A program made the translations under genes and the position numbers. A stretch of DNA of 64,000 nucleotides from Salpingoeca rosetta (taxonomy: Eukaryota > Protista > Choanoflagellata). The stretch is taken from NCBI GenBank assembly GCA_033442325.1, contig JAWQFM010000031.1, positions 593,497 through 657,496 of the forward strand, written 5' to 3'. Below, piece after piece: positions 8,703 through 64,000 of the stretch. Below the pieces are notes generated by a model, which was not told the origin of the DNA, did not search any database, and saw only the letters and a program-made list of their open reading frames with translations. Every line of letters starts with the position of its first letter. Positions within the stretch are counted from its first letter, which is position 1.

Positions 8703-9833
8703 CGTGTACGATCCTTTCTGTGTGCGTATGCGTGAGCGGAATCACTAAATGTGCTGCACTCTGGACAGCGTGGATGTGTGAATGTGGATGTGTGTGTGTG
8801 TGTGCGAGTGAGTGAGTGTATGAGACAAGCGCTGCTTGGCTTGGTTTGGCTGGTTGGCTGGCTGGCAGGCAATTGACTTGTGTCATCAGCATACACGCAC
8901 ACACACACACATGGGCTCGATTAGCTGTGCTGCCTCACCGGTAGATACAAGCAAGCAGCAAAGGGCAGTGTCGAAAACTCGCTTTCTTGCTCTCCGACTC
9001 TCCTCCTGTTCTCCGACTCTTCTCTTCTTGTCTCTCACGCACAACACGCACCAGGCGTTGAAGGCATGCGAAAACTTCTTCCACAAGCTCGCTTGCTTGC
9101 TTTGGTTGTGTTGTGTTGGTTTTGAGGCGGTCGCATTCCAACCTCCCAGGGTTGATGGGAGGCATTGTCAGGCAACCCGCGCCCTCGCATCGCAACACCG
9201 CCGCACGCCATCACCGTCGCCACACGCACGCAAACCAGCCGCTTCGCTGCCCCGTACGGTGCCGTATGCGTTTGGTGTGTCAGCACCATAGAAAACAGCA
9301 CAAGCAGTAGTAAAACATCCAACAAATTGTGTGTGGGCAAACCCGATTTTGCCGCTTACATTGTTGTTGGCAAACAAATTCAAAAACGCTTCGCTTTCTT
9401 CGCTTCTCGCTGTTTTTGTTTTGGTTGGTTGGTTGGCGAAGAAGGAACAAGGGTGGCGATGATGATGGTGATGATGGCACGCACCCGTGTGCTAGCGTGT
9501 GTGTGGGTTTGGTTGCGTGTTGGTGACATGACATGAGGCATGGGGAGGCCGCGTTGCGCTTTGAGAATAGAAACAGATTGTGTATGAACAGAGCGTGCGC
9601 TGACGCATCCTCCTCTGCAGTTTGTCTTTCAATTCATATCACCCACTCACACATGCTCTTTCCTTTGCTTGTTTGCTTGTTTGCTTGTTTGCTTGTTTGC
9701 TTGTTTGATGTGAACAATCCCATTCAGATTCCACCAAGCAAAGCAACTGCCGTGTCGTTGTGCAGTTTGTTTGTTTGTTTGTTTGTTTTGTCTGGTGTGA
9801 CATACAAGCACATCGACTTGGTGCAGCTACACA

Positions 9834-57927: not shown

Positions 57928-58592
57928 NNNNNNNNNNNNNNNNNNNNNNNNNNNNNNNNNNNNNNNNNNNNNNNNNNNNNNNNNNNNNNNNNNNNNNNNN
58001 NNNNNNNNNNNNNNNNNNNNNNNNNNNNNNNNNNNNNNNNNNNNNNNNNNNNNNNNNNNNNNNNNNNNNNNNNNNNNNNNNNNNNNNNNNNNNNNNNNNN
58101 NNNNNNNNNNNNNNNNNNNNNNNNNNNNNNNNNNNNNNNNNNNNNNNNNNNNNNNNNNNNNNNNNNNNNNNNNNNNNNNNNNNNNNNNNNNNNNNNNNNN
58201 NNNNNNNNNNNNNNNNNNNNNNNNNNNNNNNNNNNNNNNNNNNNNNNNNNNNNNNNNNNNNNNNNNNNNNNNNNNNNNNNNNNNNNNNNNNNNNNNNNNN
58301 NNNNNNNNNNNNNNNNNNNNNNNNNNNNNNNNNNNNNNNNNNNNNNNNNNNNNNNNNNNNNNNNNNNNNNNNNNNNNNNNNNNNNNNNNNNNNNNNNNNN
58401 NNNNNNNNNNNNNNNNNNNNNNNNNNNNNNNNNNNNNNNNNNNNNNNNNNNNNNNNNNNNNNNNNNNNNNNNNNNNNNNNNNNNNNNNNNNNNNNNNNNN
58501 NNNNNNNNNNNNNNNNNNNNNNNNNNNNNNNNNNNNNNNNNNNNNNNNNNNNNNNNNNNNNNNNNNNNNNNNNNNNNNNNNNNNNNNNNNNN
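57928..58592. other. Assembly gap
   Basis: N run downstream of the SEC14-like exons. Confidence 0.99.
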
Positions 58593-61485
<2,893 letters not shown>

Positions 61486-62224
61486 CTCGGCGGAGGCGGC
61501 TGAAGCGGGCCCTAATGCAACAAGCCTGCTTGCTTGCTTGCCTGCTACCGATTTGCTTGTCTTCACGCGGTTCCTCTTTCTTTTGTTTCCGATGAAGCTA
61601 CTGTTCTTCGCGAGTCTGCGCTGCTCTGTGTGTGTGTGCGCGTGTGCGTGTGTGCGTGTGTGTGTGTGCGTGTGTGCGCGTGTGCGTGTGTGCGTGTGCG
61701 TGTACGTGTGCGTGCGTGCGTGCGTGTGCGTGCGCGTGTGCGTGTGCGTGTGCGTGTGCGTGTGCGTGGTGTGGAAGATAAATTCGTGGTGCATGTGTTG
61801 CAAGCAAAGTACAACAAATACACAAGCAATGAGCGAGCGATGTCTTCATGCAGCCTCAAAGGACATCACCACAAGTCAAGCAAGGACAAGCAGCCAGCAC
61901 CTCTTCTCCCCACCAACCAACAACCGACAAAGTCCTCCACCATCCGTTCATGCAACTTGTCACATCCACACGCATGCATGCCAACGAACAGAGCCTTCAC
62001 ACCCTCACTCTCACGCTTTGCTTTTTCCTCTGATCGTGGCGGTTGTAGAAAAGTGTATGGTATCTTTCCCCGATGCTCTACCAACACAAACACAAACAAA
62101 CGCACCACGCACGATCCGCGCTTCGTGTTCACGGACGTCTCAGCACATGCAGCACATCACACCTCATCCTTCCACGCACACGCACGCACGTTTCCCCTCA
62201 CCCTAACTCCCTCTCATACTGTTG

Positions 62225-64000
62225 ATGTTGCGAGCGGTCGTTTCGTCATGGTTGGTTGTGCTGTTGTGTGCGGTTGCAGCATCAGGAACAGCAGCGACGT
62301 TCCCAAGGCAACTGCACTACGAACAACAGCAACCACCACAACAGCAACCACAACAGCAGCAACAGCAGCAACAACAGCAGCACTCAGTTCACATCATCAG
62401 CCACGAGAGTGATGATGTGGCGGCGGTACGTGCTGCCGTCTTGCGTCACATTCTACCGCAGTCACGCGGCGTGGTACCGGAGCGATGGGATGACAAGGTG
62501 CAGTATATTTTGGAGCACCTGCGCACGTCCAACGGCACGTTTGACGACGTCGACTACAACGACTACGATGGCCGGAGCTGGTGGAAGACATCCATCCACC
62601 TGCAGCGGTGCCTGATCTTGGGCATCTCCTACCACACACCATACAGTGCGCACCAGGGCAACGCGACTGTCTACGGCGCCTTGGTCAAGGCGTTTACGGC
62701 ATGGCTCAAGGCTGACTTCAAGAACAGCAACTGGTGGTGGATGGACATTGGCGTTCCACGCATCGTGGGCAAGGTGCTCTTGCTCCTGTCGCCGGCCGAT
62801 GCCACCGCGCTCTACCCGCTCGCCACGCCACTGCTTGACCGCGGGCCCCTGTCGCGCGCGTACGGCATGACCGGTTGCAACCGCGTGTGGATTGCGTCTG
62901 TCAACGTCCTTCGCGCGCTCACGGAAGGCAACGCGACGCGGCTGGCAGCGGCATATGAGGCGGCGTCATCTGCCATCGTCGTGGCGCCGTCGCAGCAGAG
63001 CGATGGCATCCAGCGCGACAACAGCTTCCACCAGCACGGCCCGCAGTTGTATCTGGGGTGGGGCTATGGCTCCATCCTCAGCGCCAACGCCCTGTTGCTC
63101 ACCAGCTACGCGGAGGGCACGCGGTTTGCGGTGGCCAACAGCACGTGGGGTGTGCTGGCATCGCTGGTGCTGGATGGGCAGCGGCTGGTGGTGCGCGGCC
63201 CCAACGTCGACTACACGACGAGCGGGCGGCTCATGACGTACTTTGCGCTCAACGACACGTTTGGCGTGAACGAGGGTCACTACCACTACTTTGCCGCGTT
63301 CACAGACTTTCGCTTGAGTTTCCCCACATTTTCGTCACCGCTTCGCACGCCGCTCTCTGTCGTGTTTGCGCCGCTGCTCTCAGAGGTCAACGACACGCGT
63401 CCGCGTGCAGCCGAGTTTCACGCCTTTGCACACGACATCTACACCAGCGATGATAAGTTTGATGGTGCTGGTGGTGGTGGTGGTGATTGTTGTTGTGGTG
63501 GTGATGGTGTGGGCGCCAAGTCGACAGCAGCAGCAACATCACCAACGTCACAGCTGAGCCTGAGCTGGCATTTTTACGACAGCGACTACGTGGTCCATCA
63601 CCGGCCGACGTTCTTTGCATCCGTGCGCATGTTTTCAAACCGAACCATCAACACGGAATGCGTCAACTCCGAGAACCTCCGTGGCCGTGATCTCGCAGAC
63701 GCCGTTTTAAATGTGTACGTGACGGGGCGGGAGTATGAAAACGTGTTTCCCGTGTGGCAGTGGCACCGCATTCCCGGCACAACCGAGCACCAGACAGGCA
63801 CACCCTACTCCTGCAGCGATGCGCGCAGCGTCCAACACACCTCCTTTGTTGGGGGTGTTACCGATCGCACGTTTAGTGTGGCCGCCATCAACTTCACGCG
63901 TGGGCACGCCGTGACGATGCATGTTTCCAAAATGCATGTTTTCGTTGACGGCGCTGTGATTGTGCTGCTGGGAGGACTGACGTCGGATGCGCCCTACCCC
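62225..64000 (+). CDS. Secreted polysaccharide lyase family 8 (chondroitin AC/hyaluronate lyase-like), no intron in the window, 3'-truncated
   Basis: Open frame from ATG 62225 to the window end. Signal MLRAVVSSWLVVLLCAVAASG, then polyQ, then PL8 motifs NSNWWWMDIGVP, TGCNRVW, DGIQRDNSFHQHGPQLYLGWGYG, TSGR, SDYVVHHRPTFFASVRMFSNRTINTECVNSENLRG and EYENVFPVWQWHRIPGTT. Confidence 0.92.
   Translation, partial: MLRAVVSSWLVVLLCAVAASGTAATFPRQLHYEQQQPPQQQPQQQQQQQQQQHSVHIISHESDDVAAVRAAVLRHILPQSRGVVPERWDDKVQYILEHLRTSNGTFDDVDYNDYDGRSWWKTSIHLQRCLILGISYHTPYSAHQGNATVYGALVKAFTAWLKADFKNSNWWWMDIGVPRIVGKVLLLLSPADATALYPLATPLLDRGPLSRAYGMTGCNRVWIASVNVLRALTEGNATRLAAAYEAASSAIVVAPSQQSDGIQRDNSFHQHGPQLYLGWGYGSILSANALLLTSYAEGTRFAVANSTWGVLASLVLDGQRLVVRGPNVDYTTSGRLMTYFALNDTFGVNEGHYHYFAAFTDFRLSFPTFSSPLRTPLSVVFAPLLSEVNDTRPRAAEFHAFAHDIYTSDDKFDGAGGGGGDCCCGGDGVGAKSTAAATSPTSQLSLSWHFYDSDYVVHHRPTFFASVRMFSNRTINTECVNSENLRGRDLADAVLNVYVTGREYENVFPVWQWHRIPGTTEHQTGTPYSCSDARSVQHTSFVGGVTDRTFSVAAINFTRGHAVTMHVSKMHVFVDGAVIVLLGGLTSDAPYP

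What the first reader, a model, noticed from the sequence alone, without database searches (positions are those of the whole stretch)
62225..64000. Endogenous secreted PL8 chondroitinase-like lyase, a possible self-encoded counterpart of the bacterial mating inducer EroS
Seen: an ORF missing from the track, with a signal peptide, no introns over 1.78 kb and the PL8 catalytic set apparently intact (Asn in TGCN, His in HQHG, Tyr in GYG, Arg in SGR, Glu in NSEN). Known: PL8 is mostly bacterial, and in S. rosetta a Vibrio fischeri PL8 chondroitinase (EroS) triggers swarming and mating by cleaving host chondroitin. Inference, dependent on the species call: a horizontally acquired lyase could remodel the cell's own glycosaminoglycan coat or act as an endogenous mating signal; it could instead digest prey polysaccharide.
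Basis: partly seen in the sequence, partly recalled or inferred. Interest (0 to 1): 0.8.

Follow-up and report, generated by a model that had tools for sequence, protein, structure and literature searches.

The report
Known choanoflagellate PL8 lyase gene, mis-modelled
The ORF is a real, expressed, apparently secreted polysaccharide lyase of Salpingoeca rosetta, but the gene (PTSG_09797), its bacterial origin and the idea that it mirrors the bacterial mating inducer EroS are already published; what is new here is that the public gene model appears to be wrong at both ends.

Summary
Window 62225-64000 (+) is an open frame of 592 codons. It carries Pfam Lyase_8_N and Lyase_8, and its closest solved relative is Flavobacterium/Pedobacter heparinum chondroitinase AC. 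The catalytic residues are conserved: N219, H271, Y281, R335 and E478.

The gene is not unannotated. It is S. rosetta PTSG_09797 / EGD79387 / F2UP32 on GL832985.1. Richter et al. (preprint 2017) reported GAG lyases in 18 of 21 choanoflagellates. Matriano et al. 2021 named this gene as a bacterial HGT candidate dating to the Urchoanoflagellate, published a chondroitin sulfate lyase tree (their Fig. 3D), and repeated the suggestion of an endogenous mating role.

New here: the 819-aa public model appears wrong at both ends.
- Its exon 1 replaces the signal peptide, yet RNA reads cover its "intron 1" and barely touch exon 1.
- Its "intron 2" removes the C-terminal beta-sandwich.
- The frame from ATG 62225 stays open for 1148 codons and fits the family end to end.
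- The Monosiga ortholog has 18 exons.

Expression is low (about 1-2.5 RPKM). A 2026 preprint shows that starvation-induced and EroS-induced clumping differ mechanistically, which weakens the simplest "self-EroS" model.

The parts
62225..64000 (+). First 592 codons of a single-exon, 1148-codon PL8 lyase ORF (S. rosetta PTSG_09797). It continues past the window to a stop at window-equivalent 65669-65671 (L001:6386-9832).
62225..62284 (+). Signal-peptide-like N-terminus (residues 1-20, MLRAVVSSWLVVLLCAVAAS). The public model omits it.
   Evidence: Hydrophobicity: maximum 10-residue Kyte-Doolittle mean 3.19, against -0.49 for the public N-terminus. All 10 homologs start the same way. RNA coverage over 62144-62277.
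61840..61945 (+). Exon 1 of the public model ([12 protein letters not shown]...), probably spurious.
   Evidence: Plus-strand RNA depth is 0.28/0.26/0 in bin 61742-61875 and 1.22/0/0 in bin 61876-62009. No joint 61945>62280 was reported. The donor GTTCAT is weak.
61946..62279 (+). Intron 1 of the public model. It more likely holds the promoter or 5' UTR and the true start codon.
62321..62380 (+). Gln/Pro-rich low-complexity tract after the signal peptide (residues 33-52, including Q10 at 43-52), predicted disordered.
62528..63229 (+). Lyase_8_N alpha/alpha toroid domain. It holds the substrate-binding Trp pair W170/W171 (62732-62737), N219 (62879-62881), H271 (63035-63037), Y281 (63065-63067) and R335 (63227-63229).
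63569..64000 (+). Start of the Lyase_8 central beta super-sandwich domain (residues 449-771, running past the window). It holds E478 (63656-63658), equivalent to ChonAC Glu371, and the invariant N481 and E483.

Best explanation
This is the 5' 1.78 kb of Salpingoeca rosetta gene PTSG_09797 (EGD79387, UniProt F2UP32), one of the organism's two published PL8 'GAG lyase' genes. The true product is most likely a 1148-residue secreted glycoprotein encoded by one uninterrupted exon. Its predicted parts, in order, are: a signal peptide; a Gln/Pro-rich linker; an alpha/alpha-toroid domain; a beta super-sandwich domain; and a C-terminal beta-sandwich split by a 47-Ser run and an Asn/Thr-rich tract. It should cleave a uronic-acid polysaccharide by beta-elimination. 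By analogy with solved PL8 enzymes (mechanism from established knowledge), Asn219 neutralises the carboxylate, Tyr281 and His271 carry out proton abstraction and donation, and Arg335 and Glu478 support them. The family entered the choanoflagellate stem, or earlier, from bacteria and has been kept in most choanoflagellates. S. rosetta makes chondroitin sulfate and has no GAG hydrolase. The most likely job is therefore low-level, regulated turnover or remodelling of the cell's own chondroitin-bearing matrix. Digestion of prey polysaccharide is a close second, and a dedicated mating-signal role is a minority possibility. Shown here: identity, fold, residues, transcription, the gene-model errors and the phylogenetic position. 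Inferred: substrate, secretion and biological role.
For: Identity: P0001 is 100% identical to the ORF and lies on GL832985.1 of GCA_000188695.1. The rebuilt public CDS is 2460 nt with GC 0.586 and 2 introns. This matches the EGD79387/PTSG_09797 row in Matriano Table S1.
Family and fold: Pfam; PDB by sequence, 1cb8 E 1e-45; AF2 model plus Foldseek, 1cb8 E 5e-34 with TM 0.81 on the target, and alignments to xanthan lyase spanning about 1147 columns.
Catalytic and substrate-binding residues: N219, Y281, R335, E483 and W170-172 are invariant, and H271 and E478 are at least 90% conserved, across 11 sequences.
Gene model: the frame is open for 1148 codons. An HMM built only from 10 other-species homologs matches the ORF to position 771 of 773, but the public model only to position 655. 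Colinear BLASTP blocks match the C-termini of S. urceolata and M. brevicollis. AF2 places strands at 888-926 and 1083-1147. RNA reads cover 'intron 1' and not exon 1, and strandedness is validated by the minus-strand CRAL_TRIO neighbour.
Phylogeny: the eukaryotic clade has SH-aLRT 98-99. It sits inside a 96-supported group with Hydrogenedentota, Acidobacteriota and Tepidisphaerae.
Context: S. rosetta makes chondroitin sulfate and encodes only GAG lyases, no hydrolase.
Against: Substrate cannot be read from sequence. PL8 also holds hyaluronate, xanthan and mannuronate lyases, and 7r2x is the second-best PDB hit by sequence. Identity to ChonAC is only about 19% over the structural alignment. The NCBIfam chondroitinase-AC equivalog scores 179 bits against a cutoff of 1000. 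The active-site loops of the AF2 model (270-278, 332-335, 475-489) have pLDDT below 50. Pfam Lyase_8_C is not detected in the ORF. RNA depth is low (1-8x), the three raw-read runs come from one study, and nothing beyond 64000 could be laid, so 'intron 2' is refuted only by homology and not by reads. No SignalP-type predictor was available.
Confidence: 0.85

Rival explanations
1. Self-made EroS: the enzyme is released under mating conditions such as starvation. It trims the cell's own chondroitin sulfate exactly as V. fischeri EroS does and thereby triggers swarming and gamete fusion. On this view bacteria hijack an endogenous signal.
For: The protein belongs to the same CAZy family and has the same Pfam N-terminal and central domains as EroS. 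Its nearest solved relative, F. heparinum chondroitinase AC, is by itself sufficient to induce swarming. It has a signal-peptide-like start. The idea has been voiced in the literature.
Against: Starved-cell clumps adhere via the collar and need F-actin. EroS-type clumps adhere via cell bodies and do not, so the two are distinct pathways. The gene is transcribed at about 1-2.5 RPKM in the three RNA runs laid, whose culture conditions are not known to me. The family is kept in 18 of 21 choanoflagellates, which suggests a more general role. No expression, secretion or activity data exist for this locus.
Confidence: 0.12
2. Digestive enzyme: the lyase is delivered to food vacuoles or the feeding collar. 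There it depolymerises uronic-acid capsules and exopolysaccharides of prey bacteria or detrital algal polymers for nutrition.
For: The organism is a bacterivore. Matriano et al. argue that many carbohydrate-active HGTs serve nutrient acquisition. The nearest bacterial relatives come from polysaccharide-degrading Planctomycetota, Acidobacteriota and Bacteroidota. PL8 specificities include xanthan and alginate. This reading explains why cells do not swarm constitutively even though the gene is expressed.
Against: Expression is low for a bulk digestive enzyme in feeding cultures. S. rosetta has an endogenous PL8-type substrate, chondroitin sulfate, and no other recognisable GAG-degrading enzyme class.
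Confidence: 0.3
3. The public 819-aa, three-exon model is right, or is one genuine isoform. On that model the product would be a non-secreted protein lacking the C-terminal domain.
For: Both annotated introns have GT-AG ends. The model is carried by NCBI, UniProt and EukProt. Reads beyond 64000 could not be examined.
Against: RNA covers intron 1 at or above exon depth, exon 1 is nearly uncovered, and no joint was reported. The model's N-terminus is hydrophilic, unlike all ten homologs. Its last 24 residues are read in a different frame from the conserved C-terminal block, and its match to the family HMM ends at position 655 of 773. Both donors are weak.
Confidence: 0.08

Closest known systems
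S. rosetta PTSG_09797 / EGD79387 / UniProt F2UP32, as published by Matriano, Alegado & Conaco 2021 (PMC7971027) and counted among the 'GAG lyases' of Richter et al. (10.1101/211789)
   Same: It is the same gene. The protein is 100% identical over the shared part. The rebuilt CDS has the same length (2460 nt), GC content (0.586) and intron count (2) as their table row. The HGT inference and the functional speculation are also the same.
   Different: The reading here starts at ATG 62225 with a signal peptide and runs unspliced for 1148 codons, which restores the C-terminal domain. The published model has 819 aa, no signal peptide and no C-terminal domain.
Flavobacterium (Pedobacter) heparinum chondroitinase AC, PDB 1cb8/1hm2 (assigned to PL8 subfamily 2 from memory, not tested here)
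   Same: It is the best sequence and structure match. The Asn/His/Tyr/Arg/Glu set and the Trp-Trp patch are conserved. The domain order is the same. This enzyme induces S. rosetta swarming.
   Different: Identity is only about 19-25%. The NCBIfam equivalog cutoff is missed by a wide margin. The ORF has long low-complexity insertions (Gln/Pro-rich, Gly/Cys-rich, Q/K-rich, S47 and N/T tracts). Its substrate is unknown.
Vibrio fischeri EroS (VF_A0994)
   Same: It has PL8 architecture (PF08124, PF02278, PF02884) and is a secreted enzyme. The catalytic His and Tyr are required for its activity.
   Different: EroS is a bacterial enzyme with demonstrated chondroitin and hyaluronan lyase activity and demonstrated mating induction. 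No EroS sequence was available here for direct comparison. No Vibrionaceae locus was among the 80 loci kept from the family-motif scan, which is weak evidence because only 80 of 208 confirmed loci were kept. No activity is known for the S. rosetta protein.
Monosiga brevicollis XP_001745997 (MONBRDRAFT_25569) and the choanoflagellate transcriptome orthologs (S. urceolata, Savillea parva, Didymoeca costata)
   Same: Identity is 36-48%. They form one well-supported clade with this gene. All start with a signal-peptide-like segment and share the conserved C-terminal Cys.
   Different: The Monosiga gene is split into 18 exons, whereas the S. rosetta gene has none. The S. rosetta protein is about 350 residues longer because of its low-complexity tracts.

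Membership tests
CAZy PL8 polysaccharide lyase | N-terminal alpha/alpha toroid domain (Pfam Lyase_8_N) | tested here: met
   79.9 bits against a cutoff of 24, residues 102-335. The AF2 model shows helices over residues 60-407.
CAZy PL8 polysaccharide lyase | Central beta super-sandwich domain (Pfam Lyase_8) | tested here: met
   193.5 bits against a cutoff of 27, residues 449-771 of the full ORF, profile positions 3-253 of 254.
CAZy PL8 polysaccharide lyase | C-terminal beta-sandwich domain (Pfam Lyase_8_C) | tested here: inconclusive
   The Pfam model does not hit the ORF. It hits only 2 of the 5 homologs scanned, and one of those (P. vitrea, 17.2 bits) is below the 22-bit cutoff. In favour: the family HMM aligns the ORF to position 771 of 773. 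There are colinear BLASTP blocks and AF2 strands at 888-926 and 1083-1147. Foldseek alignments span the full length of xanthan lyase. The domain is probably present but split by low-complexity inserts.
CAZy PL8 polysaccharide lyase | Catalytic Asn, His, Tyr, Arg, Glu (ChonAC N175/H225/Y234/R288/E371) | tested here: met
   N219, H271, Y281, R335 and E478 by the phmmer alignment to 1cb8. They are invariant or at least 90% conserved in the 11-sequence family alignment. Coordinates were checked.
CAZy PL8 polysaccharide lyase | Overall fold matches solved PL8 structures | tested here: met
   Foldseek top 33 hits are all PL8 enzymes. 1cb8 gives E 4.9e-34 and TM 0.81 on the target. The model has pTM 0.68.
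CAZy PL8 polysaccharide lyase | Beta-eliminative cleavage of a uronic-acid polysaccharide | not testable with these tools
   This needs recombinant enzyme and an A232 or disaccharide assay.
Chondroitinase AC (NCBIfam NF043001 equivalog) | Score at or above the curated equivalog cutoff | tested here: not met
   179 bits against a cutoff of 1000. It is a relative and not an equivalog, so chondroitin AC specificity is not established.
EroS-type mating inducer (functional class) | Secreted outside the cell | tested here: inconclusive
   The N-terminus is hydrophobic with an AVA/AAS-type cleavage context, this feature is shared by all homologs, and the start is supported by RNA. No signal-peptide predictor or localisation data were available.
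EroS-type mating inducer (functional class) | Degrades S. rosetta chondroitin sulfate and induces swarming or mating | not testable with these tools
   No functional data exist for this locus in the searchable literature.
Bacterium-to-eukaryote HGT | Eukaryotic sequences form one clade nested within bacterial diversity, and the gene sits in a bona fide eukaryotic contig | tested here: met
   The clade has SH-aLRT 98-99 inside a 96-supported bacterial group, although the tree is unrooted. The gene lies on a 796-kb scaffold between CRAL_TRIO, thioredoxin and SIR2 genes. The Monosiga ortholog has 17 introns. This agrees with Matriano et al..

The most novel reading that the evidence does not exclude
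The corrected, secreted three-domain PTSG_09797, alone or together with PTSG_10136, is the choanoflagellate's own chondroitin-trimming signal for cell-cell adhesion or mating, and EroS-producing bacteria mimic it. The idea itself is already in print. Only the corrected construct, which makes it properly testable, is new. A more modest reading: the gene has stayed intronless since a stem-choanoflagellate transfer, or was re-inserted as a retrocopy, while its Monosiga ortholog acquired 17 introns.
Probability: 0.12. Interest if true: 0.75.

Novelty: already known. Interest (0 to 1): 0.3.

Why it matters
The question is whether a choanoflagellate carries its own version of the bacterial enzyme that triggers its sex.

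The practical value here concerns experiments. Anyone who tests the idea with the public 819-aa model would express a protein that lacks its signal peptide and its C-terminal domain and carries a frame-shifted tail. That protein could well be misfolded or mislocalised. The corrected single-exon 1148-codon ORF (L001:6386-9829) is the construct to clone, tag or knock out. The contrast between no introns in S. rosetta and 17 in Monosiga is a small but clean case for studying intron gain or loss after an ancient HGT.

Tried and rejected
1. The first in-frame attempt on the C-terminal part failed on a frame error. It was redone in frame and gave only low-complexity noise against the PDB, so the C-terminal domain had to be shown by family comparison instead.
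2. Pfam Lyase_8_C was not detected in the ORF.
3. I considered contamination by a bacterial contig and rejected it. The gene lies on a 796-kb scaffold with eukaryotic neighbours, and DNA and RNA runs labelled with one and the same (coded) organism hold the stretch.
4. I considered a recent S. rosetta-specific HGT and rejected it on the clade structure and on orthologs in both craspedids and acanthoecids.
5. I could not obtain the Cell 2017 paper by DOI or by PMC id. The attribution of the 'endogenous regulator' idea to Woznica et al. therefore rests on Matriano's citation. The bioRxiv version does not contain the word 'endogenous'.
6. No EroS sequence was available by reference, so no direct EroS comparison or joint tree was made.
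7. The big representative-protein search was not run because the family was not in doubt.
8. The scan's earlier notes hold nothing on this gene or its paralog.
Full report
**What is in the sequence**

From ATG 62225 the plus strand is open for 592 codons to the end of the window. An in-frame TAA sits at 62204-62206, so 62225 is the first in-frame start. It is the second-longest open frame in the window.

Pfam finds Lyase_8_N (residues 102-335, 79.9 bits) and Lyase_8 (from residue 449, 142 bits). Against the PDB by sequence the best match is Flavobacterium heparinum chondroitinase AC (1cb8/1hm2, E 1e-45). It is well ahead of a fungal mannuronate lyase (2e-20), the S. coelicolor and Arthrobacter AC lyases, xanthan lyases and hyaluronate lyases. 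The NCBIfam chondroitinase-AC equivalog scores 179 bits against a cutoff of 1000, so this is a relative and not an equivalog.

**Catalytic residues**

I counted through the 1cb8 alignment, where chain index plus 22 gives the residue number. This offset places all four N-domain residues on conserved positions.

| ChonAC residue | ORF residue | Motif |
|---|---|---|
| Asn175 | N219 | TGCN |
| His225 | H271 | HQHG |
| Tyr234 | Y281 | GYG |
| Arg288 | R335 | SGR |
| Glu371 | E478 | NTEC |
| Trp126/Trp127 | W170/W171 | NWWW |

It is invariant in the family but aligns with ChonAC E376. In an 11-sequence family alignment N219, Y281, R335, E483 and W170-172 are invariant, and H271 and E478 are at least 90% conserved.

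**Whose gene it is**

A word search of the large protein collection returned an 819-aa protein (P0001) that is 100% identical over 97% of the ORF. It is carried by NCBI, UniRef and EukProt. It is encoded on GL832985.1 of GCA_000188695.1, which I know to be the S. rosetta ATCC 50818 assembly. The overlap with the window is base-for-base identical.

I rebuilt the public CDS from the locus. It is 2460 nt with GC 0.586 and two introns, and it translates exactly to P0001. These numbers equal the row for EGD79387 / PTSG_09797 / F2UP32 in Table S1 of Matriano et al. 2021. The paralog is EGD79853 / PTSG_10136 (850 aa, one intron).

**What is already published**

- Richter et al. reported that at least 18 of 21 choanoflagellates encode a Lyase_8 'GAG lyase'. 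They also reported that S. rosetta has only lyases and no GAG hydrolase, and they built a Lyase_8 tree.
- Woznica et al. showed that S. rosetta makes chondroitin sulfate. They showed that EroS needs its catalytic His and Tyr. They also showed that F. heparinum chondroitinase AC and P. vulgaris chondroitinase ABC are each sufficient to induce swarming.
- Matriano et al. list both S. rosetta lyases as bacterial HGT candidates. EGD79387 passed all their filters: Alien Index 110, best hit a Planctomycetes bacterium at 27%, no metazoan hit, last common ancestor 'Urchoanoflagellate'.
- They show a chondroitin sulfate lyase tree (their Fig. 3D) among selected candidates. [quoted passage not shown] They call for expression studies.
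- No other paper in the searchable library names the locus.

**What is new: the public gene model looks wrong at both ends**

The 5' end:
- The public model begins with an exon at 61840-61945 ([12 protein letters not shown]...). It splices GT 61946 ... AG 62279 into the ORF at 62280, which deletes ATG 62225 and the hydrophobic leader.
- Three stranded RNA-seq runs were laid over 60000-64000. Reads from the plus-strand transcript give depth 0.72/8.09/1.31 in bin 62144-62277, inside that 'intron'. They give 0.76/2.87/1.83 in bin 62010-62143.
- The same reads give only 0.28/0.26/0 and 1.22/0/0 over the two bins that hold exon 1. No splice joint was reported.
- The strand assignment is checked internally. 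The minus-strand CRAL_TRIO neighbour is covered only by the opposite read orientation.
- All ten homologs examined start with a hydrophobic, signal-peptide-like segment, as does the ATG 62225 start (maximum 10-residue Kyte-Doolittle mean 3.19). The public N-terminus scores -0.49.

The 3' end, beyond the window:
- The frame stays open for 1148 codons to a stop at window-equivalent 65669.
- The public model removes 64558-65636 as an intron and finishes in another frame.
- An HMM built only from the ten other-species homologs (773 positions) aligns to the continuous ORF up to position 771, including the conserved last Cys. It aligns to the public model only up to position 655.
- BLASTP gives colinear, in-frame blocks against the C-terminal domains of the S. 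urceolata and M. brevicollis proteins.
- Both annotated donors are weak: GTTCAT and GTCCGC.

The structure model:
- An AlphaFold2 model of the 1148-aa ORF (pTM 0.68) shows the helical toroid, the super-sandwich and C-terminal strands at 888-926 and 1083-1147. These strands flank disordered S47 and Asn/Thr-rich tracts.
- Foldseek's top 33 hits are all PL8 enzymes. 1cb8 is first (E 4.9e-34, TM 0.81 on the target), and xanthan-lyase alignments span the whole length.

Caveats:
- RNA depth is low.
- The three raw-read runs belong to one study.
- Pfam's Lyase_8_C model does not fire on the ORF.
- The active-site loops in the model have low confidence.

**Origin**

A motif scan of 185,579 prokaryotic species genomes gave 208 confirmed relatives, of which 80 were kept. 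These are mostly Planctomycetota, Acidobacteriota, Bacteroidota, Latescibacterota and Hydrogenedentota, at 23-40% identity over the best-matching segment and mostly 27-32%.

In a maximum-likelihood tree of 80 sequences, several sequences form one clade (SH-aLRT 98, or 99 with one more metagenomic sequence). They are the S. rosetta, M. brevicollis, S. urceolata, Savillea and Didymoeca proteins, several metagenomic proteins and one Ploeotia vitrea transcriptome protein. This clade lies inside a 96-supported group with Hydrogenedentota and an Acidobacteriota/Tepidisphaerae clade.

The tree is unrooted, so direction is inferred and not proven. Even so, the picture fits one old transfer before craspedids and acanthoecids split, as Matriano et al. 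concluded.

The S. rosetta gene needs no intron. Its Monosiga sister (support 87) maps to 18 exons. A related 885-aa gene on a 1.2-Mb ENA contig is also a single ORF. Only 8.8% of S. rosetta genes lack introns.

**Function**

Shown: the protein is a PL8 lyase with the catalytic set, the gene is transcribed at about 1.3-2.4 RPKM in the three runs, and it has a leader typical of secreted proteins.

Inferred: it cleaves a uronic-acid polysaccharide by beta-elimination outside the cytosol. S. rosetta synthesises chondroitin sulfate and has no GAG hydrolase. I therefore rank regulated turnover of its own chondroitin-bearing matrix first, and digestion of prey or detrital polyuronates second.

In its favour, the nearest solved relative itself induces swarming.

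Against its simplest form, a 2026 preprint shows two mechanistically different aggregation modes:
- Starvation clumps are collar-mediated and latrunculin-sensitive.
- EroS-type clumps are cell-body-mediated and latrunculin-insensitive.

In addition, the gene is transcribed at a low level in the RNA runs laid, whose conditions I do not know. I put the mating-signal reading at roughly 0.1-0.15.

**Verdict**

This is a correct observation of a known gene with a known, still untested hypothesis. The useful new output is a corrected gene model: a single exon of 1148 codons encoding a signal peptide and all three PL8 domains. Any functional test should use this model.

Noticed in passing
L082:1001-5062 (M. 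brevicollis CH991551.1) versus window 62225 to the window's end, plus L001:6386-9829: The Monosiga ortholog of this lyase maps to 18 exons, whereas the S. rosetta gene is one 3.4-kb exon. This means either complete intron loss (a retrocopy?) in the S. rosetta lineage or heavy intron gain in Monosiga after an ancient HGT.
   Followed up: partly
P0007 (EukProt Ploeotia vitrea transcriptome): A euglenid transcriptome protein, 40% identical, sits inside the choanoflagellate PL8 clade. It could be culture contamination, prey-derived RNA or a eukaryote-to-eukaryote transfer.
   Followed up: no
window 60000-62143, minus strand: Minus-strand RNA reads run in blocks (60000-60535, 60938-61205, 61340-61607) and thinly up to about 62143. 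That is beyond the annotated end of the CRAL_TRIO gene (window about 57620-61485). This gene and the lyase appear to share a divergent promoter region in an AT-rich, GT-repeat-rich stretch.
   Followed up: no
window 62057, 62073, 62147: Three ATGs lie upstream of ATG 62225 in the region covered by plus-strand RNA. Those in frame are closed by the TAA at 62204. They could be upstream ORFs if the transcript starts near 62000.
   Followed up: no
L001:8882-9022 and about 9209-9487 (window-equivalent 64721-64861 and about 65048-65326): A run of 47 serines and an Asn/Thr-rich tract of about 90 residues (N29, N8, T7 and others) sit between beta-strands of the C-terminal domain.
   Followed up: partly
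window about 38285-55019, minus strand: A 5074-codon uninterrupted ORF, the adhesin-like gene noted by another first-stage finding, lies in the GC-rich (about 63%) block of the window. It is another very long intronless gene close to this one.
   Followed up: no
L083:3001-5658 (ENA ERZ27257279, 1.2-Mb contig): An 885-aa single-ORF PL8 homolog groups with Didymoeca in the tree. It lies on a large polished contig of unidentified origin, possibly an unsequenced choanoflagellate or another protist.
   Followed up: no
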